NCBI RefSeq assembly: GCF_006345805.1
Contig: NC_043011.1
Span: forward strand, 24,440,464-24,504,463
Direction of reading: 5' to 3'
DNA: 64,000 nucleotides
Source of the DNA: Octopus sinensis
Taxonomy: Eukaryota
Position numbers and translations under genes: made by a program. Under the pieces are notes generated by a model, which was not told the origin of the DNA, did no database searches, and was given only the letters and a program-made list of their open reading frames with translations. Positions 8,740 to 61,245 of this stretch are shown here, piece by piece. Position 1 is the stretch's first letter, and each line of letters begins with the position of its first letter.

Positions 8740-8944
8740 GATGAAACACCTCCTCCACCACCAACACTATCAGTGTTTTATCATCATCACAACCACCAAC
8801 GCCTCCATCACCACCATCACCGCCACCACCACCGCTGCCACCATCATCATCATCATCATTGTCATCATCATCGTCGTTGTTGTTGTCATCATCATCATCA
8901 TCAATATCATTATCATCATCATCATCATCATCATCAATATCATT

Positions 8945-8978
<34 letters not shown>

Positions 8979-12774: not shown

Positions 12775-13566
12775 ACCGTCTGTGTGAAAAACAGCACCAT
12801 GACGCAATTATGCAATTTATTCTGCCAGAAATTTGTAAATGACATGCTGTACTGCTTGGCATTCATGCTGGAAGCTCCAATATGAACATTTCAGAGTGTT
12901 TGGTTGTGAATCAGAGGACAGTGCAATCTAAGGACATGTACTTAGAGTGATAAAAATCAAACATCCAGTCAGCATCATGGTGTTTGGAGTGATCGCTAGT
13001 GATGGCAACGTTATGCCTCCTTTCATCTTCCAATACGACCTCAGACTCAATATGGAGGCCTACATCAAGTGCCTGGAGGAAGTAGTGCTGCACTGGGTCA
13101 AGAGGGTGGCTGCTGGAAGACCCTGTATCTGGCAACAGGACTCTGCACCATACCACACAAGCAGGAGAACTCAGTCATGGCTGTCAGACAATTTCTGTGA
13201 CCACACCATGCCTAAAATCTGACCCCCTAACTCCCCAGACAGCAACCCCCTTGATTATTATGTGTGAGGTGCAGTTGAGCAAGAGACCAACAAAATACCT
13301 TGTAACACCAAAGATGAACTGAAGGCAAAGATTATAGCAGCATTCACCAACTTAAACAAGGGGACTGTCCAGAAGAGTTGCAAGAGCTTTTAAAGTCGTC
13401 TGGAGGCTGTGGTTGAAGCCAATGGCGATTGTATTGAACAAATTTACTCTTTAGTATTTCAAGATATTTTTATATAATTTTGATAAATATATCTGTTAAA
13501 ATAAGATGTCAGTGTTATTTTCATTTTTGCATCATTTAGACAACAGTTTATTCACCACAGTCTGTA
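12775..13566 (+). mobile_element. Tc1/mariner DD37D (maT-type) transposase remnant, internally deleted
   Basis: Translation MVFGVIASDG...WQQDSAPYHTSRRTQSWL...(W>*)PPNSPDSNPLDYYV*G has 37 residues between the second and third catalytic D. In-frame stops are present. Putative right terminus TTTATTCACCACAGTCTG-TA. No left TIR was found. Confidence 0.88.
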
Positions 13567-19260: not shown

Positions 19261-20405
19261 GTAGTCTATTTTACCACAAACACGTGGTTTTGCTTTCAAT
19301 CCCACTGCATGACACTTTACACAAGTCTTTTACTATAAACTCCAGGCCCAACCACAAGCCAACATTGCAAAATGGACATTAACCAAAAGAAAAGTAACTC
19401 GAAATGGCCCAGACTTGTTCTTAATGAAGGCATATTCAGTCTAATGGAACACTGTTGTATTTCTCTTGTAAAGTTATCTTTCATGTAAGAAATAAAATTG
19501 TTTTCCAATACATTAATAATAGCCCAGTGTTTAATGCACTGTGCTAGAGATAGAAGGCACTCACTATTAATAGTATAGATCATAATTTAATTTGTAAATG
19601 ACATATGTCTAATTCAAGCATATTAAATAAGAACACAGGATTACGTAAATGTGAAAACAGTTTTATTTCATTTGAAACTATTATTGAACAGAATAATATA
19701 TTATCTTTTATTCATGAAATGCTTTAATTCTTAAAAATGAGAAGAAAGCAGAGTGTCAGGCGGTGAGTCACCCATCATCACCACCACGACCACAATCATC
19801 AGTAGCAGCAGCAGCACCACCACTACTATCATATCACCACCACACCCACAACCACCACTGCCATTACCATCGTCATCATTTTAAATCTACTTGTCCAAGC
19901 TTGCATTGGTTGGACGGAGTTTTATTGATGCAGATTTTTATACAACCTGATGTCCTTCATGTTGCCAACCTTCACCTATTTGCAAGCAAGGTGACATTGC
20001 TCCATGGCCAGACATGTTCTTGCAGAACATTGGAAATGAATGACATTGCTTCGGTGACAGCGAAGTCATTCTACAACTATCACACTTTGTCGGAACAAGG
20101 AGACAAAAACACATGTACACACACACATATGTATGTACGTATGTATGTATGTATGTATGTATGTATGTATGTATGTATGTATGTATGTATGTATGTATGT
20201 ATGTATGTATGTATGTATGTATGTATGTATGTATGTATGTATGTATGCATGCATGTATGTGTGTATGTATGTATGCATGTATGTATGTATGTATGTATGC
20301 ATGTATGTGTGTGTGTATGTATGTATGCATATGTGTGTGTGTGTGTGTGTCATTTAAAACTGTTTGGTTCAGTTCCGTGCAACTTCAAGTTTTACAGACC
20401 TTTAA

Positions 20406-26774: not shown

Positions 26775-27135
26775 CCTGCATGCTATATGGGGAACTGCAT
26801 GCTATATGGGGAACTTGTGAATGGAAAGAGACCCCGGCAGAAACCAAGGCTGTGATTTAAGGACTGTGTCAAGTCATTAAATCCCTGTGATTTGCAGGAG
26901 AGTGACTGGAAGAGCAATGCTTGTCATCGCCACAGATGGAGAAAGCAGGTTAAGGTGGGGGGTCAGCACCATTGAGAGAGCACATATTCTGCATGAAGAA
27001 CTTAAGCATGCTGTTTGAAAGCACACTGCTAGTGTAGTGAATGGGGAAAGCTTCGTTTGCAATGTTTGCAGTTGTGTATACTTGTCAAGAGCAGGGCTCA
27101 TTAGCCACCAACAGAGCCACAAATGCAAAATATTA
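26775..27135 (+). mobile_element. RTE/BovB-like LINE 3' fragment with C2H2 finger
   Basis: LYGELVNGKRPRQKPRL*FKDCVKS...DWKSNACHRHRWRKQVK...FVCNVCSCVYLSRAGLISHQQSH matches the RTE C-terminal pattern. Confidence 0.8.
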
Positions 27136-27239
27136 GTTAGTCTAGAGTGCACAGTGTTCCTGAAGGTCAGCAATGATCTTCCTTGGTCACAAGTGGATGG
27201 CCATCACGTATGTGTACCTGTATATATGCATGTATTCAG

Positions 27240-27770
27240 TTACAAAACTGAATACATAAACAAGTGCCTGTCCAACAGTGATTGCATCATCCATACTCTC
27301 AACAATGTGCCCTTAAATATGGTTTCTGATTATAAATATCTTGGGTCATACATATCATCATCTGGAAAAGACTTTCTAACTAGAAAGGGTATGGCCTGGT
27401 CAGCCTGTAATGACATGCATAAGATCTGGTCATCAAATCTAAGTAGAGACTCTCGTGGAAGCGCCATCCAACCAAAATGCAAATATATGGGAAACTACCA
27501 CCTGTGTCATCTCTTGTGAAAGGTAGGAGAGTCCAGTTTGCTGGACATTGTTGTAGAGCTGAAAAAGAAGTAATTTCTACTCTTCTCCTCTGGAAGCCAT
27601 CTACTCGCAATACCAGAGGGCGCACACTCTCCTACCCTGATGTAATCTCCAGGGATACAGGCATCCAGCAACAGGACCTCCGTAATGCCATGATGGACCG
27701 TGAAGTCTGGCGTAGCATGGTAAATTCCATTGTCTCGACCACGGTCGAACACTGATGATGATGATGATAT
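27240..27770 (+). mobile_element. Second RTE-clade LINE 3' fragment with internal deletion and (GAT)n tail
   Basis: VSDYKYLGSYISSSGKDFLTRKGMAWSAC / deletion near 27452 / IYGKLPPVSSLVKGRRVQFAGHC...DREVWRSMV, then TGATGATGATG. Confidence 0.88.
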
Positions 27771-30373: not shown

Positions 30374-30951
30374 CCTATCTCACTACCATAGCTGATAGAT
30401 TAGCAAAGGGAACGACCCCTCCTCACCACAAGCACAATTTTCAAAATGGCGCCTTTTCAATAATTTTGTTTTGTTTGATAAAAGTTAAATCTTCTTTTTT
30501 TTCATTTATCGCATGGCCTTGATAGAACTTTCTGGAGTCATTACTTTATTTGACCAACCTCCCTTGTTTTTTGAACTGTCTGCTCAATCTCCTCTGATGT
30601 GTCGGCAGCCGCTGACATCTGAAGAACTGAAACAAACCCTGACGTCATAACCTCTTCTTTTTCATGTCTCTTCTATGTCTGAGAGTTGTAAGTTTCATGC
30701 ATAATGACAACGTTACTGAGACATGAAATTAATTAATGTAGAATACAATTACATATATTATAACTAATGAAATATTTTGCGCAATATAAGAGGAGTTAAA
30801 TGACTTAAAACTTGTTTGGTATGAGTAATGGCGCCTCATTTTTATGTGCTCACCCCCCTAACTTTAGAACCTGGCTATGCCTCTGATCTATATATCTGCC
30901 TGCTTGCCTGCCTATCTGTCTGTCTACTTCTCTATCTCTCTCTCTCTCTAT

Positions 30952-31215
30952 CATCATCATCATCATCATCATCGTTTAACGTCCGCTTTCCGCGCTAGCA
31001 CGGGTTGGACGGTTTGACCGGGTCTGGGAAGCCAGGGGCCGCACCAGGCTCCAGTCTGAATCTGGCAGAGTTTCTACGGCTGGATGCCCTTCCTAACGCC
31101 AACCACTCCGTGAGTGGATTGGTGCTTTTTACGTGCCACCTGCACAGGGGCCGGAGGGTCCGGCATCGTCACGATCGGTTCGAGCATTTTAACGTGTCAG
31201 CGGCACATGGGCAAC
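30952..31215 (-). mobile_element. Very young (CpG-intact) family C retroposon 3' body with (GAT)n tail
   Basis: Reverse complement reads GGCACGTAAAAAGCACC..GGAGTGGTTGGCGTTAGGAAGGGCATCCAGCCGTAG...GCGGAAAGCGGACGTTAAACGATGATG. It keeps CpGs that are lost in most other copies. Confidence 0.88.
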
Positions 31216-32027
31216 GAGGTCCGGGGTACTTTGGGGATCCGGGGTACTTAGAATGAGTAGGGGGTATGTGGAATTGCTGCAGAAAGCAGCCCGGGTCTTG
31301 TAGTCACAGCATTTATCATCACTGAGTAACGTAATTAGGTAGAGGAAAGAATACAGATATTCTAGAGTTGAGTTGGGGAGGGGGAGGTCCAGTTGAGGCG
31401 GGTAATATAGGAGGGCAACCAGTGGAAGGTTGGGGTAAGGAGGAACGATGGCAGGAAGGGTTGGTGTAGGTTCCTAAGAAATAAAGACATTCGTTATCGT
31501 CACTGAGTAACGTTATTAGGTAGAGGAAAGAATACAGATATTCGAGAGTTGAGTTGGGGAGAGGTGGGGTCCAGTTGAGGCGGGTAATATAGGGGAGCAA
31601 CCAGTGGGGAAGGTTGGGGTAAGGAGGAACGATGGCAGGAAGGGTTGGTGTAGGTTCCTAAGAATAAAAAACATAGGATATTACGAGGCGGGAGGGTGCT
31701 AAAGGGGATAGTCGGAATGAGGCAGTGTCAGGAGGAAGCATAAGATCGGTGGGCAGTTTATGAGCTATGGCGCTAGCAGCTTGTCTTTTCACAGTGAAAG
31801 CATATGAGGAGAAGGGGTAGTGGGGGGAGGGGGAGGGAGTAGAGCGTACCCGGTGTAGATGAGTAAGGCGTATCCGTGTGTAGATGGTGAGGACAGGGTA
31901 TACTGGTATTGGTGGTGGGAGGTGAGGAACAGTGTTCACCGTATTGGTGGTGGGGGTGAGAACAGTGTTCATCGGTATTGGTGGTGGGGTTTGGTGGTGG
32001 GGGTGGTGGGGTGGGGGGCGGTCGCGA
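31216..32027. repeat. Purine/G-rich linker with a 181 bp direct duplication, ~33 bp repeats and G-tracts
   Basis: CACTGAGTAACG...GTTCCTAAGAA at 31320 and 31501, GGTATTGGTGGTGGG three times at 31906-31990, and a G-run tract at 31980-32020. Confidence 0.85.
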
Positions 32028-35000
32028 CCGCCAATGGCTGAAAGATGAGAAGAGATGGGAAGAGATGGGAAAGATAGGATTACGGCTTGAGGTAGCCTGG
32101 CCTAAGGTTAAATTTTGTAGAGAGAGATAGAACGATAAATCAAGTTATGGCGAAGGCTTGAAAGTAGCCTAAAAGGTTAAATTTCGTAACAATGTATGAA
32201 GAAACGTAGTAACAACGAATAAAATAGTAAATATAAATTTTTAAGAACTTGCTGCGGACATCGAACGGGATTTGAAATTGAATTGGGAATTAAATTATAG
32301 AATCGTAATGGTGAGAGGAGGAAAAAAAGGAAAAAAAGACCGCCAATGGCTGAAAGATGAGAAGAGATGGGAGAGATGGAAAGATAGGATTACGGCTTGA
32401 GGTACCTGGCCTAAGGTTAAATTTTGTAGAGAGAGAGAATAGAACGATAAATCAAGTTATGGCGAAGGCTTGAAAGTAGCCTAAAAGGTTTAATTTTCGT
32501 AACAATGTATGAAGAAACGTAGTAACAACGAATAAATAGTAAGATAATTTTTAAGAACTTGCTGCGGACATCGAACGGGAGTTGAAATTGAATTGGGAAT
32601 TTAAATTATAGAATCGTAATGGTGAGAGGAGGAAAAAAAAGGAAAAAAACCGCCAATGGCTGAAAGATGAGAAGAGATGGGAAGAGAATAGGGAAGAATG
32701 GATTACGGCTTGAGGTAGCCTGGCCTAAGGTTAAATTTTGTAGAGAGAGAGATAGAACGATAAATCAAGTTATGGCGAAGGCTTGAAAGTAGCCTAAAGG
32801 TTAAATTTTCGTAACAATGTATGAAGAAACGTAGTAACAACGAATAAATAGTAAGATAAATTTTAAGAACTTGCTGCGGACATCGAACGGGAGTTGAAAT
32901 TGAATTGGGAATTTAATTATAGAATCGTATGGTGAGAGGAGGAAAAAAAGAAAAAAAGACCGCCAATGGCTGAAAGATGAGAAGATGGGAAGAGAGAAGA
33001 GATAGGATACGATTACGGCTTGAGGTAGCCTGGCCTAAGGTTAAATTTTGTAGAGAGAGAGATAGACGATAAATCAAGTTATGGCGAAGGCTTGAAAGTA
33101 GCCTAAAAGGTTAAATTTTCGTAACAATGTATGAAGAAACGTAGTAACAACGAATAAAATAGTAAGATAAATTTTAAGAACTTGCTGCGGACATCGAACG
33201 GGAGTTGAAATTGAATTGGGATTTAAATTATATGAATCGTAATGTGTGAGAGGAGGAAAAAAAAGAAAAAAAGACCGCCATGGCTGAAAGATGAGAAGAG
33301 ATGGAAGAGATGGGAAGAGATAGGATTACGGCTTGAGTAGCCTGGCCTAAGGTTAAATTTGTAGAGAGAGAGATAGAACGATAAATCAGTTATGGCGAAG
33401 GCTTGAAAGTAGCCTAAAGGTTAAATTTTCGTAACAATGTATGAAGAAACGTAGTAACAACGAATAAAATAGTAGATAAATTTTAAGAACTTGCTGCGGA
33501 CATCGAACGGGAGTTGAAATTGAATTGGGAATTTAAATTATAGAATCGTAATGGTGAGAGGAGGAAAAAAAAGGAAAAAAAGACCGCCAATGGCTGAAAG
33601 ATGAGAAGAGATGGGAAAGATGGGAAGAGATAGGATTACGGCTTGAGGTAGCCTGGCCTAAGGTTAAATTTTGTAGAGAAGAGATAGAACGATAAATCAA
33701 GTTATGGCGAAGGCTTGAAAGTAGCCTAAAAGGTTAAATTTTCGTAACAATGTATGAAAAACGTAGTAACAACGAATAAAATAGTAAGATAAATTTTTAG
33801 AACTTGCTGCGGACATCGAACGGGAGTTGAAATTGAATTGGGAATTTAAATTATAGAATCGTAATGGTGAGAGGAAGAAAAAAAAAAAAAGACCGCCAAT
33901 GGCTGAAAGATGAGAAGAGATGGGAAGAGATGGGAAGAGATAGGATTACGGCTTGAGGTAGCCTGGCCTAGGTTAAATTTTGTAGAGAGAGAGATAGAAC
34001 GATAAATCAAGTTATGGCGAAGCTTGAAAGTAGCCTAAAGGTTAAATTTTCGTAACAATGTATGAAGAAACGTATAACAACGAATAAAATAGTAAGATAA
34101 ATTTTTAAGAACTTGCTGCGGACATCGAACGGGAGTTGAAATTGAATTGGGAATTTAAATTATAGAATCGTAATGGTGAGAGGAAAAAAAAAGGAAAAAA
34201 AGACCGCCAATGGCTGAAAGATGAGAAGAGATGGAAGAGATGGGAAGAGATAGGATTACGGCTTGAGGTAGCCTGGCCTAAGGTTAAATTTTGTAGAGAG
34301 AGAGATAGAACGATAAATCAAGTTATGGCGAAGGCTTGAAAGTAGCCTAAAGGTTAAATTTTCGTAACAATGTATGAAGAAACGTAGTAACAACGAATAA
34401 AATAGTAAGATAAATTTTTAAGAACTTGCTGCGGACATCGAACGGAGTTGAAATTGAATTGGGAATTTAAATTATAGAATCGTAATGGTGAGAGGAGGAA
34501 AAAAAAGGAAAAAAGACCGCCAATGGCTGAAAGATGAGAAGAGATGGGAAGAGATGGAAGAGATAGGATTACGGCTTGAGGTAGCCTGGCCTAAGGTTAA
34601 ATTTGTAGAGAGAGAGATAGAACGATAAATCAAGTTATGGCGAAGGCTTGAAAGTAGCCTAAAAGGTTAAATTTTCGTAACAATGTATGAAGAAACGTAG
34701 TAACAACGAATAAAATAGTAAGATAAATTTTTAAGAACTTGCTGCGGACATCGAACGGGAGTTGAAATTGATTGGGAATTTAAATTATAGAATCGTAATG
34801 GTGAGAGGAGGAAAAAAAGGAAAAAAAGACCGCCAATGGCTGAAAGATGAGAAGATGGGAAGAGATGGGAAGAGATAGGATTACGGCTTGAGTAGCCTGG
34901 CCTAAGGTTAAATTTTGTAGAGAGAGAGATAGAACGATAAATCAAGTTATGGCGAAGGCTTGAAAGTAGCCTAAAAGGTTAAATTTTCGTAACAATGTAT

Positions 35001-38000
35001 GAAGAAACGTAGTAACAACGAATAAAATAGTAAGATAAATTTTTAAGAACTTGCTGCGGACATCGAACGGGAGTTGAAATTGAATTGGGAATTTAAATTA
35101 TAGAATCGTAATGGTGAGAGGAGGAAAAAAAAGGAAAAAAAGACCGCCAATGGCTGAAAGATGAGAAGAGATGGGAAGAGATGGGAAGAGATAGGATTAC
35201 GGCTTGAGGTAGCCTGGCCTAAGGTTAAATTTTGTAGAGAGAGAGATAGAACGATAAATCAAGTTATGGCGAAGGCTTGAAAGTAGCCTAAAAGGTTAAA
35301 TTTTCGTAACAATGTATGAAGAAACGTAGTAACAACGAATAAAATAGTAAGATAAATTTTTAAGAACTTGCTGCGGACATCGAACGGGAGTTGAAATTGA
35401 ATTGGGAATTTAAATTATAGAATCGTAATGGTGAGAGGAGGAAAAAAAGGAAAAAAAGACCGCCAATGGCTGAAAGATGAGAAGAGATGGAGAGATGGGA
35501 AGAGATAGGATTACGGCTTGAGGTAGCCTGGCCTAAGGTTAAATTTTGTAGAGAGAGAGATAGAACGATAAATCAAGTTATGGCGAAGGCTTGAAAGTAG
35601 CCTAAAAGGTTAAATTTTCGTAACAATGTATGAAGAAACGTAGTAACAACGAATAAAATATAAGATAAATAATTTTTAAGAACTTGCTGCGGACATCGAA
35701 CGGGAGTTGAAATTGAATTGGGAATTTAAATTATAGAATCGTAATGTGAGAGGAGGAAAAAAAGGAAAAAAGACCGCCAATGGCTGAAAGATGAGAAGAG
35801 ATGGGAAGAGATGGGAAGAATAGGATTACGGCTTGAGGTAGCCTGGCCTAAGGTTAAATTTTGTAGAGAGAGAGATAGAACGATAAATCAAGTTATGGCG
35901 AAGGCTTGAAAGTAGCCTAAAAGGTTAAATTTTCGTAACAATGTATGAAGAACGTAGTAACAACGAATAAATAGTAAGATAATTTTTAAGAACTTGCTGC
36001 GGACATCGAACGGGAGTTGAAATTGAATTGGGAATTTAAATTATAGAATCGTAATGGTGAGAGGAGAAAAAAAAGGAAAAAAAGACCGCCAATGGCTGAA
36101 AGATGAGAAGAGATGGGAAGAGATGGAAGAGATAGGATTACGGCTTGAGGTAGCCTGGCCTAAGGTTAAATTTGTATAGAGAGAGATAGAACGATAAATC
36201 AAGTTATGGCGAAGGCTTGAAAGTAGCCTAAAAGGTTAAATTTTCGTAACAATGTATGAAGAAACGTAGTAACAACGAATAAATAGTAAGATAAATTTTT
36301 AAGAACTTGCTGCGGACATCGAACGGAGTTGAAATTGAATTGGGAATTTAAATTATAGAATCGTAATGGTGAGAGGAGGAAAAAAAGGAAAAAAAAGACC
36401 GCCAATGGCTGAAAGATGAGAAGAGAGGGAAGAGATGGGAAGAGATAGGATTACGGCGGCTTGAGGTAGCCTGGCCTAAGGTAAATTTTGTAGAGAGAGA
36501 GATAGAACGATAAATCAAGTTGGCGAAGGCTTGAAAGTAGCCTAAAAGGTTAAATTTTCGTAACATGTATGAAGAAACGTAGTAACAACGAATAAAATAG
36601 TAAGATAAATTTTTAAGAACTTGCTGCGGACATCGAACGGGAGTTGAAATTGAATTGGGAATTTAAATTATAGATCGTAATGGTGAGAGAGGAAAAAAAA
36701 GAAAAAAACCGCCAATGGCTGAAAGATGAGAAGAGATGGGAAGAGATGGGAAGATAGGATTACGGCTTGAGGTAGCCTGGCCTAAGGTTAAATTTTGTAG
36801 AGAGAGAGATAGAACGATAAATCAAGTTATGGCGAAGGCTTGAAAGTAGCCTAAAAGGTTAAATTTTCGTAACAATGTATGAAGAAACGTAGTAACAACG
36901 AATAAAATAGTAAGATAAATTTTTAAGAACTTGCTGCGGACATCGAACGGGAGTTGAAATTGAATTGGGAATTTAAATTATAGAATCGTAATGGTGAGAG
37001 GAGGAAAAAAAAGGAAAAAAGACCGCCAATGGCTGAAAGATGAGAAGATGGAAGAGATGGGAAGAGATAGGATTACGGCTTGAGGTAGCCTGGCCTAAGG
37101 TTAAATTTTGTAGAGAGAGAGATAGAACGATAAATCAAGTTATGGCGAAGGCTTGAAAGTAGCCTAAAAGTTAAATTTTCGTAACAATGTATGAAGAAAC
37201 GTAGTAACAACGAATAAATAGTAAGATAAATTTTTAAGAACTTGCTGCGGACATCGAACGGGAGTTGAAATTGAATTGGGAATTTAAATTATAGAATCGT
37301 AATGGTGAGAGGAGGAAAAAAAGGAAAAAAAGACCGCCAATGGCTGAAAGATGAGAAGAGATGGGAAGAGATGGGAAGAGATAGGATTACGGCTTGAGGT
37401 AGCCTGGCCTAAGGTTAAATTTTGTAGAGAGAGAGATAGAACGATAAATCAAGTTATGGCGAAGGCTTGAAAGTAGCCTAAAAGGTTAAATTTTCGTAAC
37501 AATGTATGAAGAAACGTAGTAACAACGAATAAAATAGTAAGATAAATTTTTAAGAACTTGCTGCGGACATCGAACGGGAGTTGAAATTGAATTGGGATTT
37601 AAATTATAGAATCGTAATGGTGAGAGGAGGAAAAAAAGAAAAAAAGACCGCCAATGGCTGAAAGATGAGAAGAGATGGAAGAGATGGGAAGAGATAGGAT
37701 TACGGCTTGAGGTAGCCTGGCCTAAGGTTAAATTTTGTAGAGAGAGAGAGATAGAACGAAATCAAGTTATGGCGAAGGCTTGAAAGTAGCCTAAAAGGTT
37801 AAATTTTCGTAACAATGTATGAAGAAACGTAGTAACCACGAATAAAATAGTAAGATAAATTTTTAAGAACTTGCTGCGGACATCGAACGGGAGTTGAAAT
37901 TGAATTGGGAATTTAAATTATAGAATCGTAATGGTGAGAGGAGGAAAAAAAAGGAAAAAAAGACCGCCAATGGCTGAAAGATGAGAAGAGATGGGAAGAG

Positions 38001-39837
38001 ATGGGAAGAGATAGGATTACGGCTTGAGGTAGCCTGGCCTAAGGTTAAATTTTGTAGAGAGAGAGATAGAACGATAAATCAAGTTATGGCGAAGGCTTGA
38101 AAGTAGCCTAAAAGGTTAAATTTTCGTAACAATGTATGAAGAAACGTAGTAACAACGAATAAAATAGTAAGATAAATTTTTAAGAACTTGCTGCGGACAT
38201 CGAACGGGAGTTGAAATTGAATTGGGAATTTAAATTATAGAATCGTAATGGTGAGAGGAGGAAAAAAAAGGAAAAAAAGACCGCCAATGGCTGAAAGATG
38301 AGAAGAGATGGGAAGAGATGGGAAGAGATAGGATTACGGCTTGAGGTAGCCTGGCCTAAGGTTAAATTTTGTAGAGAGAGAGATAGAACGATAAATCAAG
38401 TTATGGCGAAGGCTTGAAAGTAGCCTAAAAGGTTAAATTTTCGTAACAATGTATGAAGAAACGTAGTAACAACGAATAAAATAGTAAGATAAATTTTTAA
38501 GAACTTGCTGCGGACATCGAACGGGAGTTGAAATTGAATTGGGAATTTAAATTATAGAATCGTAATGGTGAGAGGAGAAAAAAAAGGAAAAAAGACCGCC
38601 AATGGCTGAAAGATGAGAAGAGATGGGAAGAGATGGGAAGAGATAGGATTACGGCTTGAGGTAGCCTGGCCTAAGGTTAAATTTTGTAGAGAGAGAGATA
38701 GAACGATAATCAAGTTATGGCGAAGGCTTGAAAGTAGCCTAAAAGGTTAAATTTTCGTAACAATGTATGAAGAAACGTAGTAACAACGAATAAATAGTAA
38801 GATAAATTTTTAAGAACTTGCTGCGGACATCGAACGGGAGTTGAAATTGAATTGGGAATTTAAATTATAGAATCGTAATGGTGAGAGGAGGAAAAAAAAG
38901 GAAAAAAAGACCGCCAATGGCTGAAAGATGAGAAGAGATGGAAGAGATGGGAAGAGATAGGATTACGGCTTGAGGTAGCCTGGCCTAAGGTTAAATTTGT
39001 AGAGAGAGAGATAGAACGATAAATCAAGTTATGGCGAAGGCTTGAAAGTAGCCTAAAAGGTTAATTTTCGTAACAATGTATGAAGAAACGTAGTAACAAC
39101 GAATAAAATAGTAAGATAAATTTTTAAGAACTTGCTGCGGACATCGAACGGGAGTTGAAATTGAATTGGGAATTTAAATTATAGAATCGTAATGGTGAGA
39201 GGAGGAAAAAAAGGAAAAAAAGACCGCCAATGGCTGAAAGATGAGAAGAGATGGGAAGAGATGGGAAGAGATAGGATTACGGCTTGAGGTAGCCTGGCCT
39301 AAGGTTAAATTTTGTAGAGAGAGAGATAGAACGATAAATCAAGTTATGGCGAAGGCTTGAAAGTAGCCTAAAAGGTTAAATTTTCGTAACAATGTATGAA
39401 GAAACGTAGTAACAACGAATAAAATAGTAAGATAAATTTTTAAGAACTTGCTGCGGACATCGAACGGGAGTTGAAATTGAATTGGGAATTTAAATTATAG
39501 AATCGTAATGGTGAGAGGAGGAAAAAAAAGGAAAAAAGACCGCCAATGGCTGAAAGATGAGAAGAGATGGGAAGAGATGGGAAGATAGGATTACGGCTTG
39601 AGGTAGCCTGGCCTAAGGTTAAATTTTGTAGAGAGAGAGATAGAACGATAAATCAAGTTATGGCGAAGGCTTGAAGTAGCCTAAAAGGTTAAATTTTCGT
39701 AACATGTATGAAGAAACGTAGTAACAACGAATAAAATAGTAAGATAAATTTTTAAGAACTTGCTGCGGACATCGAACGGGAGTTGAAATTGAATTGGGAA
39801 TTTAAATTATAGAATCGTAATGGTGAGAGGAGGAAAA
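32028..39837 (+). repeat. Head-to-tail satellite array of 25 monomers, consensus ~317 bp
   Basis: Monomer starts (CCGCCAATGGCTG) counted at 32028, 32340, 32650 ... 37964, 38281 ... 39540, with the last copy slightly truncated. Differences between copies are mostly 1-3 bp deletions. Confidence 0.98.
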
Positions 39838-39847
39838 TATATATATA

Positions 39848-40030
39848 CTCTTTACTCTTTTACTTGTTTCAGTCATTTTGACTGCGGCCATGCTGGAGCA
39901 CCACCTTTAGTCGAGCAAATTGACCCCAGGAGTTATACTTTGAAAGCCTAGTACTTATACTATTGCTAAGTTACGGGGACGTAAACACACCAACATCGGT
40001 TGTCAAGCGATGTTGGGGGCACAAACACAA

Positions 40031-40066
<36 letters not shown>

Positions 40067-40621
40067 GACGGGCTTCTTTCAATTTCCGTCTACCAAATCC
40101 GAGGCTATAGTAGAAGACACTTGCCCAAGGTGCCACGCAATGGGACTGAACCCGGAACCATGTGGTTGGAAAGCGAGCTACTTACCACACAGCCACTCCT
40201 ACGCCTATAAATATATATATATACAGAGAGAGAGAGAGACTCTATATGTATATATATGTATATATACAAAATAAGAAATAATACAAAATAAGAACCCCTA
40301 TCTCACTTTGTACTTCATCATCATCATCATCATCGTTTAACGTGCGTTTTCCATGCTAGCATGGGTTGGATGGTTCAACTGGGGTCTGGGAAGCCAGAAG
40401 GCTGTGCCAGGCCCAATCTGATCTGGCAGTGTTTCTACAGCTGGATGTATACTTATATACATATAGCTGGATGTCTACTTATATGTATATATATAGACTC
40501 TTTTGCTCTTATTTGTTTCAGTCATTTGACTGCGGCCATGCTAGAGCACCACCTTTAATCGAACAAATAGACTCCAGGACTTATTCTTTGTAAGAGGGAG
40601 GGACAAACACAGACACACAAT

Positions 40622-40654
<33 letters not shown>

Positions 40655-40790
40655 GACGAGCTTTTTTCATTTTCCGTCTACCAAATCCACTCACAAGGCT
40701 TTGGTCGGCCAAGGTGCCACATAGTGGGACTGAACCTGGAACCATTTGGTTCGTAAGCAAGCTACTTACCACACAGTCACTCCTGCATAT
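39848..40790 (-). mobile_element. Cluster of minus-strand SINEs: family A (39848-40205), family C tail (40316-40445), family A (40500-40790)
   Basis: CTCTTTTACTCTTTTACTTGTTTCAGTC tail, reverse-complement head GCTACTTACCACACAGCCACTCCT, and (CAT)n-CGTTTAACG. Confidence 0.8.
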
Positions 40791-42476
40791 ATCTATATAT
40801 TTATTTATGCATATATATATATATTTGTTTTTCAGTCTGGGTTGTACATGTGTGTGTGTGTGTGTGTACAGCCTAGTTGGTCATTTCACAAATCTGTCTT
40901 AGATAGAAACAGCACCAAGTACATTAGGTGCTTGAGGACTGACGACATAACCTTAAGTTCAAAACTTACAACAGCTATAATGTTGCGTACAGTTACATAA
41001 CTCTGCCTCTGTACACAACTTTTTGCTTGAAACGAACAAGTTGACCTCCATGCAGTTGCTCAACTTGCTAGAAATACCAGCCAAATCCCCTTAAACTCGC
41101 ATTACATCATTCATAGCCTATATTTCAAAAAAGGAAAAAGACACATTAGATAATATAGTCTGAAAACAGGTTTCCAGCTATGAAAACATGACCGTTTGAC
41201 AATAATATAAAACTTTGTATTTCAGTGTCTGCTATGTTGTATTTGTAATATTTTGCCACTTGAAACAGAAGCCTGCCAGCTTAGATCTTACTAAGGCTAT
41301 CCAATAACAAACAGCAATATTTCACAAGAAATCAATTACTGTTGTATTGAAAACAGTTTTTAAAACCATTTTTCAGATAACAATTTTTTCCCTCTCTCTC
41401 TCTCTCAAGACAAAATGAATAAACCTCAATACTGGATGTTTTTTGAGTTTTCAATATTTTAGTTTTATCTTCAGATTTATTCATAAAAAATGTAGAGAGA
41501 AAATATTTTGAACCAATATTTCGACAGAGTGTGGTTTCTTTCTTTTATTTATTGATCCAGCTCTTATTTTGTTATTGTTGTTGTTGTTGTTTTGTATTGG
41601 TTTCTTCTTTTATATCATTGTTCTTTTTCTTTTATAAATAAATGATCTATATTTGTGAGTATGAATGGGCATATGTGCATGCATGCGTGTGTTTATGTGT
41701 GTTTGAGTGTGTGTGATTAAGAGAAAGTGAGTGCAGGCATGTATGTTTGTGTGGATGTAGTTGTGTATGGATATTTTTGTGTGTATGTTGTGTGCATATT
41801 TTGTGTGTATTCAGCCATGTGACTACATTATGGCTGAATGGTTAAGAAGTCTGCATCACAATCATAAGGCCCCAGGTTGGATATCACCTTTTTAGCATTT
41901 CAGACAAGTACTTTTTTATTGCTAAAACTTCAGGTCAGCCCAAGTCTTGTAAGTGAAATTAGATAGGTGGGACTATAGAAAAGACCACCGGATTGTTTGT
42001 ACTTGTGAACTCAAAGGTCAGATTTGTTATGTATTATGTCACTCACACTGATTCTGGCTTGGGGTTTTTCTTTTTAATCTTCAATCCAAGAGAGACAGGC
42101 AGTGTCCATAACCCTTTTTCCAAGGTCTCCAACACTCTGCTATGAGGTTGGGAGTGAGAAAGATATCCCCTAACTGAGACCTGGCCTAAATGCCTGTGAT
42201 AGAGGGGTCTCTGCTAAAGGCACCCAAGAACCAGTTGGTGGTTTTAAATCAGGCAGCAGATTCAGTCTACTCCTTAAGGAACATTGAGGATTCATATCTC
42301 AGTTGATTGAACAATTGAACACATGTCACTGAAACCAACAGAGATTCATTTGCTTAAATGCACTGGTGTATCTCAGGCAACATGGTTATGGATAATATAA
42401 TAAGACTCTGAGGATAACCTTGTTGGTAGTTGTTAGGATTAGGTTTACTTTTACTTATATTTTGGTGTTTATTTTG

Positions 42477-52509: not shown

Positions 52510-52515
52510 TGTGCA

Positions 52516-52555
<40 letters not shown>

Positions 52556-53488
52556 CACACACACAAATACATTCAGTATCAAACATCAGTGTCTCTTTCT
52601 CTTCTGTTTTCCCCCTCTCTTTGTGATGGCTTTCTTTCACCTTCACCTATAGAACATAGATACAGTATCAAACATCAGTGGCTTTCTCTCTCCTGCTATC
52701 TCTCTCTCTCTTTCAACATCTCCTATAGAAACTTATTTTCTCTCTTTGTTTCTTTCTTTCTTCTCTCTGTCTTTTTCTCATTCTGAGTTTCTTTCGCTCA
52801 CACATATTCTCTCTCACTCTCTGTAATAGTTCCTTTCTTTTAGTCTGTTTCTTTTACTCTCTCTTTCTAACTTACTGACACACCTACACTATTTACATTT
52901 CTCCCTCTGTTGAAAAATGTTGTGATGAATGAGGAGATGGAGAAGGAAAGAGCAACTTCTTCACTTTGCTTCTGTGTTTCTTTCTCTCTCTTCTCACTCC
53001 CTCATTGGCATTATGCACAGACATACAAATACACAAACATCTGCTAATGTATAAATATAGGTGTGATGTCATCATCGTAGTGGTATAAAATATTGTTTAT
53101 GATAGTTGACTTATAGAAAGATTATAATGTTAAATTTTTGTAATGCAAATATATAAATGAAAAATAAAGTTCATATGGTAGCTGAAAGATTACTGAATCT
53201 TTTGATACCCTATACATCAAAATTGGCTACTAAGTTTTTGAAACATATATAGATATAGATGTGACGTTGTCGTCGTCATCGACGTGGTATAAAATGTTGT
53301 TTATGATAGTTGACACATAGAAAGATTATAATGTTAAATTTTTATAATGCAAATATATAATGAAAATAAAGTTTATTTGGTAGCCGAAAGATTACTGAAT
53401 CTGTTGATACCCTATACGTCAAAATCGACAGCTAAGTTCTGAATGCATAAGGAGCATATGCACAAACACAGACACACACACACACACA

Positions 53489-53521
<33 letters not shown>

Positions 53522-54460
53522 CACACACACAAATACATTCAGTATCAAACATCAGTGTCTCTTTCTCTTCTGTTTTCCCCCTCTCTTTGTGATGGCTTTC
53601 TTTCACCTTCACCTATAGAACATAGATACAGTATCAAACATCAGTGGCTTTCTCTCTCCTGCTATCTCTCTCTCTCTTTCAACATCTCCTATAGAAACTT
53701 ATTTTCTCTCTTTGTTTCTTTCTTTCTTCTCTCTGTCTTTTTCTCATTCTGAGTTTCTTTCGCTCACACATATTCTCTCTCACTCTCTGTAATAGTTCCT
53801 TTCTTTTAGTCTGTTTCTTTTACTCTCTCTTTCTAACTTACTGACACACCTACACTGTTTACATTTCTCCCTCTGTTGAAAAATGTTGTGATGAATGAGG
53901 AGATGGAGAAGGAAAGAGCAACTTCTTCACTTTGCTTCTGTGTTTCTTTCTCTCTCTTCTCACTCCCTCATTGGCATTATGCACAGACATGCAAATACAC
54001 AAACATCTGCTAATGTATAAATATAGGTGTGATGTCATCATCGTAGTGGTATAAAATATTGTTTATGATAGTTGACTTATAGAAAGATTATAATGTTAAA
54101 TTTTTGTAATGCAAATATATAAATGAAAAATAAAGTTCATATGGTAGCTGAAAGATTACTGAATCTTTTGATACCCTATACATCAAAATTGGCTACTAAG
54201 TTTTTGAAACATATATAGATATAGATGTGACGTTGTCGTCGTCATCGACGTGGTATAAAATGTTGTTTATGATAGTTGACACATAGAAAGATTATAATGT
54301 TAAAATTTTTATAATGCAAATATATAAATGAAAATAAAGTTTATTTGGTAGCCGAAAGATTACTGAATCTGTTGATACCCTATACGTCAAAATCGACAGC
54401 TAAGTTCTGAATGCATAAGGAGCATATGCACAAACACAGACACACACACACACACACACA
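52510..54460. repeat. ~967 bp near-identical tandem duplication bounded by (CA)n, each unit holding an older ~198 bp tandem duplication
   Basis: CAAATACATTCAGTATC at 52564 and 53530. Inner repeat GTGA(T/C)GT..GTGGTATAAAAT at about 53063/53261 and 54030/54227. Confidence 0.92.
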
Positions 54461-54544
54461 CACAAACCTCATATGTGTGTATGCATGTGTTTGTGTGTGT
54501 GTGTGTGTGTGTGTGGTGTGTATGTGTGTTTGTACTGATATTTA

Positions 54545-58559: not shown

Positions 58560-61245
58560 CCATAGTTAAGACTGTTTATACTGTAATATTTGTCCTCAGC
58601 CATCTGGATGACTTCTCACAAATATGGTCATCTATGAAATTAACTGAACAACTCAAAGCATTCCATTGCTGCACCACCAAGAGGATTGCTTCAAGGTGAC
58701 TGATGAACTGCTGGACGAGACTGAAAGAAATAAAACTCTATTCTTTAGAGCAATGGTTCTCAAGGTGCACCCAGGCATACTGGTGCACCCAGAAGGAACA
58801 AAATATGAATGACTCTGCAACAGCCAAGTGTGTGAAAGTGTGGCACTTGCAGGTGGTGGTAGCAAATGTGGTGTTTTTATTGAGTTAAACAGTCATTCAG
58901 AGTGGAAATGTTGTTACTTTCACTTGCAAAAAGTACACCCATACAAAATGGATAGGTTTCTTATTAAAAAGAAGTGCAATATTAATGAATGTGAACCTAG
59001 AAGTGAGCAAAGCTTAAGTGAAACAAGTAGTTCAAATAAGAAACTGAAACCGTGGCCTACTCGTAAGTACGTTATAAGTTATTTAAGTTTTGGTTTCACA
59101 TGGACTGGAAGTGAAGACCATTTTTGACGTTATGTTTAGTATGTGGAAATAAAATGTCAAATGGATCATCGCTTTCTAGTGAACTGAGCAAACATTTAAA
59201 AACTAAACATCCTCATTTACAAGATAAATCTACAAATTATTTTAAGAGATTGTCTGAACAGCAAACTAAAATGGCAAATTCTTTCATAAATAAAATGATT
59301 GTCTCTGAGAAAACTCAAATTGCTTCCTACCAAGACTCAGAACTGATAGCACAAAATATGAAAGCTCATACTATAGGCGTCACTCATTTTTGCCTGCGTA
59401 CAAAAAGGTAGTCTCAACAATGCTTGGGAATGAAGAAGCAAAAGAAATAAGCAAGATTCTACTGTTCAACAATACAGTTCACAGGTGCATTTTAGAAATG
59501 TCTTCTGATATCGAGAAAAATTTATGTAGTAATAAACTTTAAGTATTCCCCTTTTGCATTGCAAGTTGATGAGTCAACAGACATTACCAGCAAGGTGCAA
59601 CTCTTAGCATTCATTTGTTTTATCGATGAAGCTCAAATAGTAAATCAGTTTCTTTTTTGCAAAGAATTAAGTGTCACTGCAAAAGGAGAGGACTTTTTCA
59701 ACATTCTGAATACAGACTTTGATAAATGGCAGTTATCATGGAAATCATGTGTGGGTATTTGTACAAATGGAGCCCCTTCCATGGTAGGCTGTGTTAAGGG
59801 TCTCACAGCTTTTGTAAAAAAACAAAATGAGAATGTTAGTGTTACTCACTACTTTCTTCAATGAGAGGCCTTGATGGCAAAAATATTAGAAGAGGAACTA
59901 AAAGAAGTTTTATATCAAGTTGTTCAGATGGTAAACTTTATTAGAACAACACCTGTCAAATCTCATATATTCGAACAGTTTTGTACCAATATGGATTCTC
60001 AACACAAATGGCTGACAAGAGGAAAAATACTTACCCATGTACACGAGCTATGACACAAACTTCCTGCGTTCTTTGAAGAAATGAAACAATCTAATTTGTG
60101 TGACCTTTTTCATTCCAAGTTTTGGATTGCCAGGTTACAGTTTTTGGCCAATATATTTCAGCTGCTCAATATTTTAAATACTAGCATGCAAGGGAAAGAA
60201 GAAAACATTCTAATGTCCACTGACAAAATGAAAGCTTTCCAAAAAAACTTAAGATTTGGAAATGAAAAGCTGTCGAAAGGAATTTGGAAATATTTCCTTT
60301 GTTAAGTCAAAGTGAAGCAGGTATAAATGAAACACTCCCATTAATAGTTGAGCATTTAGCAAGTTTAGAAGCAAATTTGAGTTCGTATTTCCAATCACTG
60401 AAAACTGAATAATATATACTGAATCAGAAACCCTTTCGTGGAAACTCCCAATGATTTCAAATTAACATTGATAGAAGAAAAGGAACTCGATGCTATATCT
60501 ACTGACTGTGGATTAACGATGAAACAAAAGGAATTGTCACTTGAAGCTTTCTGGATTTCTGTAAAAGATGAATATGTTTCGCTTTCTAAAAAAGCTCTTA
60601 CAATTTTGCTGCAATTTTCAACTTCATATCTATGTGAATTGGGATTTTCCACTCTTTCTACTATTAAGGACAAAAAGCGAGGAACACTTACATGTATTGA
60701 TGAAGAAATGCGAGTTTGTCTTTCAAACATACGCCCAAACATTGAAGAAACTGCCAAGACACATGGAGCTAATGTTTCCCATGAACTCAAAAATGAAGAA
60801 TTTTAAAGTATGCATTATTTTCTGTTATTTAGCTTAGAAATTTGCATATGGTGCACCCACAATTATTTGTAGGGGTTCAAGTGCACCCTGACCTCAAACA
60901 AGTTGAGAACCACTGCCCTAGAATGAAGACCAGAAAGGTATGTAGTGATATATGTCTGGAAAATCCTCAAAGAGTTGGCACCAAACTTTGAAACTGAAAG
61001 CTAGTAAAATCTCTGTAAATGATCATACTGCATAGAACCAAAAATTCCCTAGAATTATGTCCACATAATGTCATAGGTCTCAAAGGCTCATAGTTCTTCA
61101 ATACTCTACCAAAAGGCTTGGAGTATAAATGATGCTTTCAAGAGCTAACTGTACATTTTATTATCTGAGATTCTAGATGCCTTTACCTCATGGCAAGAAA
61201 TGCAAATGAGAGGAGCAACATTGCAGCAGTGAACTCTCTCATTCA
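58560..61245 (+). mobile_element. CR1/Jockey-group LINE 3' fragment in two pieces (about 58560-58750 and 60916-61245), split by the hAT element
   Basis: VLSHLDDFSQIWS...NCWTRLKEIKLYSLE | SLE*RPERYVVIYVWKILKEL... rejoins across the insertion. Confidence 0.75.
58751..60915 (+). mobile_element. Near full-length hAT Buster/Charlie-family DNA transposon with a disrupted transposase
   Basis: TIRs CAATGGTTCTCAA and TTGAGAACCACTG, with 8 bp flanks CTTTAGAG and CCCTAGAA. BED finger CLVCGNKM..LSKHLKTKH, catalytic-region motifs QVDESTDI and ICTNGAPSMVG, and dimerisation region FSTSYLCELGFSTL..EEMRVCLSNIRPNI. Many stops and frameshifts. Confidence 0.93.

What the first reader, a model, noticed from the sequence alone, without database searches (positions are those of the whole stretch)
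30952..39837. Possible composite element: 25-copy 317 bp array + G-rich linker + young retroposon tail
Seen in sequence, read on the minus strand: (TA)n, 25 near-identical monomers, an ~810 bp C/T-rich linker, a CpG-intact family C body, then a (GAT)n tail. Array and linker share one strong purine/pyrimidine strand bias. The monomer keeps 11 CpGs and the tail keeps its CpGs, unlike the decayed repeats around them. Inference: these may have formed or moved as one recent unit, by analogy with VNTR-bearing SVA elements or L1 5' monomer arrays. I do not recognise the monomer. Caveats: no clear TSD, and copy differences are mostly small homopolymer deletions that look like long-read errors, so true copy number and divergence are uncertain.
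Basis: partly seen in the sequence, partly recalled or inferred. Interest (0 to 1): 0.75.

Follow-up and report, generated by a model that had tools for sequence, protein, structure and literature searches.

The report
Young 316-bp tandem array in octopus
A stretch of octopus DNA holds 25 almost identical head-to-tail copies of a 316-base unit next to a G-rich spacer and the tail end of a jumping gene; the array is real and young, but whether the three parts travelled together as one mobile element could not be shown.

Summary
Window 32026-39837 is 25 head-to-tail copies of a 316-bp unit with 11 CpGs. The copies differ by 12 substitutions and 110 small indels, and the indels recur at the same homopolymer positions, as long-read errors do. 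To the left lie a 0.78-kb G-rich spacer, itself built of older tandem duplications, then about 275 bp of 'family C' and (GAT)8.

New here: family C is the 3' UTR and tail of a LINE. In one Octopus bimaculoides locus the same tail follows a LINE ORF remnant, and the window's other copies are 5'-truncated. The (TA)5 more likely belongs to the flank of a neighbouring SINE. A 16-bp perfect GC palindrome sits on the spacer/array junction.

The SVA-like composite reading is neither shown nor excluded. Against it:
- there is no target-site duplication;
- base composition changes sharply at the C/spacer junction;
- this C copy is no closer to its family than the others at non-CpG sites;
- CpG retention also covers independent neighbouring elements;
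- no other C copy carries spacer or monomer.

The decisive test, other genomic copies, was out of reach. Most likely this is a macrosatellite amplified in place and bracketed by unrelated retroposons (about 0.5); composite retroposon about 0.2.

The parts
30952..30975 (-). (GAT)8 microsatellite tail of the LINE-derived 'family C' fragment
   Evidence: Read in sequence. Every other C copy in the window and in L003 ends in the same (GAT)n.
30976..31249 (-). 'Family C' body: a 5'-truncated 3' UTR of a LINE, including about two 66-bp units. It keeps 23 CpGs. It ends in a 12-bp duplication (31220-31231 and 31238-31249).
   Evidence: Matches other window copies and the L003 LINE tail at 82% over 203 bp. 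CpG o/e 0.94. Non-CpG branch length 0.096.
31250..32025 (.). G-rich spacer ('linker'), found nowhere else in the window. It contains a 181-bp duplication (31313-31490 / 31494-31674, 93%), 24/34/13-bp tandem repeats at 31837-32010, and the window's only canonical G-quadruplex motif at 31814-31837.
   Evidence: No similarity to the monomer or to the C 66-bp unit beyond shuffled controls. CpG o/e 0.69, purine fraction 0.67.
32017..32032 (.). Perfect 16-bp GC-rich palindrome GGCGGTCGCGACCGCC straddling the spacer/array junction. Its right half is the first 7 nt of monomer 1 plus one spacer base.
   Evidence: Among perfect palindromes of 12 nt or more with GC of at least 0.3, the four of 16 nt or more other than this one consist of short tandem repeats. 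The other 24 monomer starts are preceded by an A run instead.
32026..39837 (.). Array of 25 head-to-tail monomers, consensus 316 bp. On the + strand each unit ends in an A-rich run. The last unit is cut to 300 bp inside that run. The monomer contains a (AGATGGGAAG)~3.8 sub-repeat and a roughly 33-bp internal duplication.
   Evidence: No ORF of 40 aa or more in the consensus. No Rfam or tRNA hit. No excess RNA structure on either strand.
39838..39850 (.). (TA)5-6 boundary microsatellite, probably the flank or target of the neighbouring SINE rather than part of the unit
   Evidence: The SINE at 39851-40207 has TA-rich sequence on both sides. Other copies of that SINE also abut TA-rich sequence.
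39851..40207 (-). Neighbouring SINE 'A', with a tRNA-like B-box judged by eye. It is not part of the unit but defines its right border. It is relatively CpG-rich (13 CpGs, o/e 0.74).
   Evidence: ARAGORN finds no tRNA.

Best explanation
This is a young large-unit tandem repeat (a macrosatellite-type satellite array) that grew in place.

Proposed sequence of events:
1. A 316-bp, CpG-rich, purine-rich unit lay beside a G-rich segment that had already undergone several tandem duplications.
2. The unit was amplified by unequal exchange or replication slippage to about 25 copies, which are still practically identical.
3. The array starts exactly at a GC-rich palindrome, a kind of junction known from mollusc satellites.
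4. The LINE 3'-tail fragment on the left (family C) and the SINE on the right are separate retroposon insertions that happen to bracket it.

Nothing is encoded. Any effect would come through chromatin or transcription of the repeat.

Shown: the anatomy, the homogeneity, the junction features, the LINE origin of C, and the absence of retroposition hallmarks around the block.

Inferred: the amplification mechanism, amplification at this locus, and the independence of C.
For: - The monomers differ by 0.15% substitutions. One variant (a missing T at about consensus position 220) is shared by the adjacent monomers m03-m05. Indel differences increase toward the spacer-side edge (Spearman -0.70, p = 1e-4). 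Decayed edge monomers are expected for arrays maintained by unequal exchange (PMC5139131).
- From the C 5' end to the array, the segment is a series of tandem duplications of falling age. The 34-bp units are 62-82% identical, the 181-bp pair 93%, and the 316-bp monomers about 99.8% by substitutions. This suggests a locus prone to duplication.
- A second, unrelated young tandem duplication (966 bp, 99.2%) lies 13 kb away.
- A palindrome sits exactly at the junction. Palindromes mark some mollusc satellite junctions (PMC5139131).
- No target-site duplication for the block or for C alone.
- Composition changes sharply at the C/spacer junction.
- C is an ordinary 5'-truncated LINE tail, like 7 others in the window with lengths of about 90-390 bp.
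- Independent neighbouring elements also retain CpG.
Against: - The monomer (CpG o/e 1.40) and the spacer (0.69) are far richer in CpG than the surroundings (mean 0.29 in 1-kb bins). They are also richer than the other young duplication of resident DNA (0.40). The progenitor was therefore either a recent arrival or protected from CpG decay.
- The left edge of the CpG-rich block coincides roughly with a retroposon tail.
- Array and spacer are unrelated in sequence yet share the same C and T fractions. That would fit a single transcript or element.
- No other copy of monomer or spacer could be examined, so origin at this locus is unproven.
Confidence: 0.5

Rival explanations
1. Composite non-autonomous retroposon. 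On the minus strand a transcript of monomers, spacer and LINE 3' tail is reverse-transcribed by the partner LINE, which recognises the C tail and (GAT)n. The monomer block behaves as a VNTR that can expand before or after insertion.
For: - C is the 3' UTR and tail of a LINE, the recognition module that passengers of such LINEs carry. Octopus RTE-type LINEs have microsatellite 3' ends (PMC9115989).
- All three parts keep their CpGs in a CpG-poor neighbourhood.
- The minus strand of monomer and spacer has no AATAAA. This is trivial given the base composition.
- The 5'-most monomer is truncated to 300 of 316 bp.
- The second 66-bp unit of this C copy is strongly diverged from the other copies yet CpG-rich. 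That would fit a separate master lineage.
Against: - No target-site duplication.
- The (TA)n more likely belongs to the neighbouring SINE's flank.
- Composition breaks at the C/spacer junction.
- The C part is not closer to its family at non-CpG sites.
- CpG retention also covers independent neighbours.
- None of the 9 other C copies seen carries spacer or monomer.
- An 8.9-kb non-coding passenger with 25 identical units is long for trans-mobilisation.
Confidence: 0.2
2. A germline-unmethylated, CpG-island-like domain of about 30.4-40.3 kb with a function of its own, for example a promoter or enhancer repeat, or the source of a long non-coding or small RNA. Everything inside it, whatever its age, escapes CpG decay. 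The array would then be comparable to CpG-rich macrosatellites.
For: - CpG retention spans several unrelated elements: 30.4-30.9 kb, the C body, the spacer, the array and SINE A1.
- The C copy shows about 10% non-CpG divergence while keeping 23 CpGs.
- In the 181-bp spacer duplicates, 93% identical, only one of about 13 differences is a CpG-to-CpA change.
- 30976-32025 has GC 0.51-0.60 and CpG o/e 0.7-0.9.
- Every monomer carries a CCAAT motif.
Against: - No evidence of transcription, no RNA family hit, and no structure signal.
- In O. bimaculoides, satellites are reported as relatively more methylated than other repeats (PMC9476566).
- Other CpG-richer patches occur elsewhere in the window.
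Confidence: 0.15
3. One-off chimeric retrocopy or other single insertion. Either the LINE reverse transcriptase started on a C-tailed RNA and switched to a transcript of a satellite locus, or an extrachromosomal circle of the repeat reintegrated here.
For: - Abrupt junctions between three unrelated sequences.
- A palindrome at the spacer/array junction and a 12-bp duplication at the C/spacer junction, which could be template-switch scars.
- CpG-rich DNA in a CpG-poor context.
Against: - No target-site duplication.
- No donor locus is known.
- Nothing distinguishes this from the other readings with the data at hand.
Confidence: 0.08
4. Partly an assembly artefact. The array exists, but its copy number and the near-identity of its copies were produced by the assembler collapsing or expanding a repeat.
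For: - Indels recur at fixed homopolymer positions. This shows the region kept unpolished long-read errors.
- Error density changes along the array.
Against: - Both junctions are clean and unique.
- A variant shared by three adjacent monomers looks like real sequence.
- This reading explains the copy number, not the anatomy.
Confidence: 0.07

Closest known systems
Large-unit tandem arrays: macrosatellites such as human D4Z4 and DXZ4, and euchromatic satellite-like arrays of molluscs (PMC5139131)
   Same: Head-to-tail units of hundreds of bp. Very high homogeneity. CpG-rich units. Abrupt junctions. A palindrome at the junction and more variable edge monomers, as described for some mollusc satellites.
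   Different: The unit is 316 bp with no ORF, whereas D4Z4 is 3.3 kb with a gene. Genome-wide abundance and location are unknown. Only one array was seen.
SVA and LAVA composite VNTR retroposons of hominoids
   Same: The order is a repeat block, then unrelated sequence, then a retroelement-derived 3' module with a tail. It is non-coding. Copy number of the repeat block can vary.
   Different: In SVA the VNTR is internal, with units of 35-50 bp that vary between copies, and target-site duplications and thousands of dispersed copies define the family. Here the array is terminal, the units are 316 bp and identical, there is no target-site duplication, and no second copy is known.
5' monomer arrays plus tether of mouse and rat L1
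   Same: Tandem monomers of a few hundred bp at the 5' side, a non-monomeric linker, and a truncated outermost monomer.
   Different: L1 monomers precede ORF1 and ORF2 of an autonomous element. Here no ORF lies between array and tail, and 25 units far exceeds typical L1 arrays.
Satellite-like arrays carried by Helentron or pearl-type non-autonomous elements in bivalves (PMC7492417, PMC5139131)
   Same: A mollusc. A tandem array embedded in a possible mobile unit. A palindrome near the repeat junction, as in DTC84.
   Different: Those arrays are short (up to about 6-10 units of about 160-170 bp) and lie between defined element ends. No Helitron or Helentron ends, TIRs or LTRs were found here.
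5'-truncated LINE 3' ends with microsatellite tails (RTE-type LINEs of octopus, PMC9115989)
   Same: The C segment ends in (GAT)n, occurs at many lengths in the window, and follows a LINE ORF remnant in O. bimaculoides.
   Different: This applies to the C segment only, not to the spacer or array. The clade of the partner LINE was not determined.

Membership tests
Satellite / macrosatellite tandem array | Many head-to-tail copies of one unit with high mutual identity | tested here: met
   25 copies, 96% matches by TRF. 12 substitutions in 7.8 kb.
Satellite / macrosatellite tandem array | The family is present as arrays at one or more genomic sites (abundance, location) | not testable with these tools
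   No octopus genome could be searched by DNA. The monomer is absent from the rest of the window and from about 50 kb of other Octopus DNA, which says little.
SVA-like composite retroposon | 3' module and tail that the partner LINE can use | tested here: met
   C plus (GAT)8 is the 3' UTR and tail of a LINE.
SVA-like composite retroposon | Target-site duplication flanking the whole unit | tested here: not met
   No shared word of 6 nt or more in the 60-nt flanks. Caveat: the flanks are microsatellites, and other C copies also lack clear duplications.
SVA-like composite retroposon | Multiple dispersed copies with the same architecture | not testable with these tools
   None in the window or in L001 and L003. 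Protein-route and pattern searches cannot reach octopus non-coding DNA.
SVA-like composite retroposon | All parts on one transcribed strand | not testable with these tools
   No expression data. Strand bias is shared by array and spacer but not by C.
LINE with 5' monomer promoter array (L1 type) | Monomers lie upstream of the LINE's own ORFs | tested here: not met
   No ORF above 104 aa in the block. tblastn with the L003 LINE protein finds nothing in the window.
LINE with 5' monomer promoter array (L1 type) | Monomers have promoter activity | not testable with these tools
   Needs a reporter assay or CAGE.
Helitron / Helentron-borne array | 5' TC and 3' hairpin plus CTRR ends, inserted between A and T | tested here: not met
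   The only hairpin-like palindrome (32017-32032) is followed by CTGA after 5 nt and then by A, not T. That motif recurs in every monomer. Nothing fits on the other strand.
DNA transposon or LTR element carrying the array | Terminal inverted or long terminal repeats at both ends | tested here: inconclusive
   Repeat search within each flank found no LTR- or TIR-like repeat. A short-word comparison across the two 60-nt flanks (same strand only) also found nothing. The flanks were not compared across the block at full length or in reverse complement.
tRNA-derived SINE (for the C segment) | tRNA-like head with A and B boxes | tested here: not met
   ARAGORN and Rfam are silent. The longest copies run into 66-bp repeats and, in L003, a LINE ORF remnant.
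LINE 3' end (for the C segment) | Contiguous with LINE coding sequence in full-length or long copies | tested here: met
   In L003 18055-20498 the order is an EN-like ORF (weak Exo_endo_phos hit), an RT N-terminal region, a C-terminal ORF, about 125 bp, 66-bp units, the C body and (GAT)n. This rests on one instance only.
Structured non-coding RNA gene array | Match to a known RNA family, or folding energy beyond shuffled controls | tested here: not met
   No Rfam hit. Fold z-scores -0.64 and +0.15.

The most novel reading that the evidence does not exclude
The block is one copy of a cephalopod counterpart of SVA. This would be a non-autonomous retroposon family that joins an expandable 316-bp monomer array and a G-rich spacer to the 3' tail of a (GAT)n-tailed LINE, is mobilised in trans by that LINE, and is recently active.
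Probability: 0.2. Interest if true: 0.65.

Novelty: new member of a known kind. Interest (0 to 1): 0.3.

Why it matters
As it stands, this is one more young tandem array in a repeat-rich genome. It is useful mainly as a marker of how fast large-unit repeats arise in octopus, and as a warning that this region of the assembly keeps long-read errors.

It would matter more if the three parts prove to be a family. VNTR-bearing composite retroposons are known almost only from hominoids. An independent invention in a cephalopod, riding on a microsatellite-tailed LINE, would show that this architecture recurs. It would also give a tractable, recently active non-autonomous element in a lineage where transposon activity is much discussed.

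Identifying 'family C' as a LINE 3' end rather than a SINE is a small but concrete annotation gain.

Tried and rejected
1. External copies by the protein route. Translated monomer ORFs, spacer, junction and C ORFs and an exact look-up of the 104-aa spacer ORF all returned nothing. The error-free monomer has no start-to-stop ORF above 39 aa, so it cannot appear in any protein collection.

2. Exact DNA patterns. A monomer 26-mer is absent from the metagenome and viral contig collections. A conserved C pattern is also absent from the metagenome collection, so that collection holds no octopus DNA and the monomer result says nothing.

3. Sampling octopus DNA through annotated genes. This gave L001 (O. 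vulgaris) and L003 (O. bimaculoides). L002 and L004 proved not to be octopus. There was no spacer or monomer match. The sample is far too small to count as a negative.

4. RNA gene array. No Rfam, tRNA or folding signal.

5. Coding element. No ORF of note and no LINE protein remnant in the window.

6. Spacer as decayed monomers or decayed C units. Alignment scores do not exceed shuffled controls.

7. Helitron or Helentron, TIR or LTR element. No matching ends.

8. Target-site duplications, for the block and for C alone. None.

9. A guess that 30410-30862 is a MITE with inverted ends. The repeat finder did not confirm it, so it was dropped.

10. Literature search for a described octopus satellite or composite element. 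Nothing specific was found.
Full report
WHAT IS THERE

Tandem Repeats Finder reports a single array at 32026-39837, period about 313, 25.0 copies, 96% matches, score 14577. No other long-period, high-copy array exists in the 64 kb. Cutting at the monomer start gives 25 units of 300-317 bp. The consensus is 316 bp, GC 0.367, with 11 CpGs and CpG o/e 1.38.

Against this consensus the 25 copies carry 12 substitutions and 110 indel events in 7812 bp. 63 of the indels are single-base changes within runs. The same positions recur in non-adjacent monomers: G34, T92, A152, A203, T220. That is the signature of systematic long-read error, so the true copies are close to identical.

Two features look real. 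A missing T at about position 220 is shared by the adjacent monomers m03-m05. Differences also become denser toward the spacer-side edge (Spearman -0.70, p = 1e-4).

The monomer has a 10-bp sub-repeat (AGATGGGAAG, about 3.8 copies) and an internal duplication of about 33 bp. On the + strand it ends in an A-rich run. The array begins at the first base after that run and ends inside it, so the last unit is 300 bp.

THE FLANKS

To the left lies a 0.78-kb segment, 31250-32025, with base fractions G 0.41, C 0.11, A 0.26, T 0.23. It is not a plain linker. It holds:
- a 181-bp direct duplication at 93% identity, 31313-31490 / 31494-31674;
- tandem repeats of 24, 34 and 13 bp at 31837-32010;
- the only canonical G-quadruplex motif in the window, 31814-31837.

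It shows no similarity to the monomer or to the 66-bp unit of family C beyond shuffled controls. It has no other copy in the window.

The spacer/array junction lies inside a perfect 16-bp palindrome, GGCGGTCGCGACCGCC (32017-32032). The other four perfect palindromes of 16 nt or more in the window consist of short tandem repeats. The other 24 monomer starts are preceded by the A run instead.

Further left come about 275 bp of 'family C' and (ATC)8, which reads (GAT)8 on the minus strand.

To the right, the array abuts (TA)5-6 and then a SINE, which I call A (39851-40207). By eye it has a tRNA-like B-box on the minus strand. This SINE has TA-rich sequence on both sides, and other copies of it also sit in TA-rich sequence. 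The (TA)n is therefore more likely that SINE's flank than the head of a composite.

WHAT FAMILY C IS

The window holds seven other C copies, all ending in (GAT)n and truncated at different 5' points, with matches of about 90-390 bp. The longer copies run into tandem 66-bp units.

The same tail occurs twice in 21 kb of Octopus bimaculoides chromosome CM046608.1, fetched as L003. At L003 18055-20498 the following lie on one strand, in this order:
- an endonuclease-like ORF, with a weak Pfam Exo_endo_phos hit below the curated cut-off;
- a reverse-transcriptase N-terminal region;
- a C-terminal ORF ending near 19925;
- about 125 bp of further sequence;
- five to six 66-bp units;
- the C body;
- (GAT)n.

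Family C is therefore best read as the 3' UTR and tail of a LINE, and the window copies as ordinary 5'-truncated insertions. This rests on one long instance, and the LINE clade was not determined. Microsatellite 3' ends are described for an octopus RTE-type LINE (PMC9115989). No protein remnant of this LINE is present in the window.

CpG AND COMPOSITION

CpG o/e values:
- flanks: 0.26-0.28
- C body: 0.94
- spacer: 0.69
- array: 1.40

In 1-kb bins outside the block the mean is 0.29, sd 0.19. Where this C copy has CpG, the other copies have TG or CA.

Three qualifications apply.
1. Retention is not confined to the proposed unit. The 200-bp windows starting at 30400-30800 score 0.5-0.9, and the neighbouring SINE A scores 0.74 with 13 CpGs.
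2. At non-CpG sites this C copy is not closer to its relatives than the decayed copies are. Its star-tree branch is 0.096 against 0.10-0.18 for the others. Either it belongs to a separate, recently active subfamily or it is old but shielded from CpG decay.
3. Purine fraction jumps from 0.50 to 0.67, and GC skew from 0.09 to 0.59, at the C/spacer junction. Spacer and array, though unrelated in sequence, share C 0.09-0.11 and T 0.226.

In O. bimaculoides fewer than 10% of CpGs are methylated, mostly in gene bodies. Transposons are largely unmethylated, and satellites somewhat more methylated (PMC9476566). The strong CpG depletion of the surroundings is therefore itself a local feature.

TESTS OF THE COMPOSITE-RETROPOSON READING

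Met:
- a genuine LINE-type 3' module and tail;
- a truncated outermost monomer;
- all parts CpG-rich.

Not met:
- no target-site duplication of 6 nt or more around the block, and none of 7 nt or more for C alone;
- no second copy of spacer or monomer next to any of the nine other C copies seen;
- no compositional continuity across the C/spacer junction;
- the (TA)n head more plausibly belongs to the neighbouring SINE's flank than to the unit.

Not testable: dispersal in the genome and transcription.

I tried to reach other octopus sequence in four ways.
- Translated ORFs of the monomer, spacer and junctions gave nothing. The error-free monomer has no ORF above 39 aa, so it cannot be in a protein collection.
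- A monomer 26-mer is absent from the metagenome and viral contig collections. A conserved C pattern is absent from the metagenome collection too, so no octopus DNA is held there.
- Octopus loci could be fetched only around annotated genes. This gave about 50 kb in all, without a match.
- The literature searches found no described octopus satellite or composite of this kind.

OTHER READINGS TESTED

- No Rfam family, tRNA or excess RNA structure on either strand.
- No coding capacity.
- No Helitron-type ends.
- No terminal inverted or long terminal repeats within either flank.

MOST LIKELY EXPLANATION

The stretch from the 5' end of C to the end of the array is a run of tandem duplications of falling age. 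The 34-bp units are 62-82% alike, the 181-bp pair 93%, and the 316-bp monomers about 99.8% by substitutions. A second, unrelated tandem duplication of 966 bp at 99.2% lies 13 kb away.

Abrupt junctions, a palindrome at the junction and more variable edge monomers are all described for mollusc satellite arrays (PMC5139131).

I therefore favour a macrosatellite-type array that grew in place by unequal exchange or replication slippage beside a duplication-prone G-rich segment. The LINE tail and the SINE would be independent insertions on either side. Confidence is about 0.5.

The weak point is CpG. The other young duplication of resident DNA has CpG o/e 0.40, whereas the monomer has 1.40. The progenitor was therefore either newly arrived or protected from decay. 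That keeps three rivals alive:
- the composite retroposon (about 0.2);
- a germline-unmethylated domain with its own function (about 0.15);
- a one-off chimeric insertion (about 0.08).

Copy number, and possibly the near-perfect identity of the copies, may also owe something to assembly (about 0.07, not exclusive of the others).

VERDICT

The array is young, array and spacer plausibly belong together, and the tail is a real retroposon 3' end. That the three moved as one unit is not shown, and several hallmarks are missing.

The decisive computation is a genome-wide search for the monomer, the spacer and the two junctions, together with the orthologous site in sister species. Interest is modest unless that search finds a family.

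Noticed in passing
window 52514-54467: A very young tandem duplication with a 966-bp period and two copies at 99.2% identity. Each copy contains an older internal duplication of about 200 bp (86%). CpG o/e is 0.40. TRF missed it because the period exceeds 500 bp.
   Followed up: partly
window 58813-60803 (+): A frameshifted remnant of a hAT-type transposase (ZBED5 / FAM200 / GTF2IRD2-like; Pfam PF14291, PF27073 and PF27046 in its relatives). The best database relatives are 73% identical.
   Followed up: partly
L003 18055-20498 (O. bimaculoides CM046608.1): An internally deleted LINE (endonuclease-like ORF, RT N-terminal region, C-terminal ORF) followed by 66-bp tandem units, the family C body and (GAT)n. 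This links 'family C' to a LINE 3' end. The clade is undetermined.
   Followed up: partly
window 32017-32032: A perfect 16-bp GC-rich palindrome, GGCGGTCGCGACCGCC, exactly on the spacer/array junction. Its origin is unexplained: a template-switch scar, a recombination site or a binding site.
   Followed up: partly
window 40439-40491: A 26-bp tandem duplication that copies the 5' end (AGCTGGATG) of the truncated C fragment at 40315-40447 together with 17 bp of flank.
   Followed up: no
window 27019-27752 (+) and 12932-13219 (+): By eye, a LINE reverse-transcriptase C-terminal remnant with a C2H2-like motif, and a mariner-like DDE fragment. Pfam gave no hit for either, so both are unverified.
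   Followed up: partly
window 30400-30900: An unclassified segment of about 450 bp between the (TATC)n microsatellite and the C tail, with moderately retained CpG (o/e 0.5-0.9). My guess that it is a MITE with inverted ends was not confirmed by the repeat finder.
   Followed up: partly
window 8842-9063, 9547-9747, 10887-11150, 20128-20350: Long trinucleotide and tetranucleotide microsatellites, (CAT)n, (CCA)n-like and (TATG)n. They create spurious long ORFs of up to 394 aa.
   Followed up: no
window 39851-40207 and 40497-40807: Two copies of the same SINE in the same orientation, about 650 bp apart. Each lies to the right of a C fragment. The first is markedly richer in CpG (13 against 6).
   Followed up: partly
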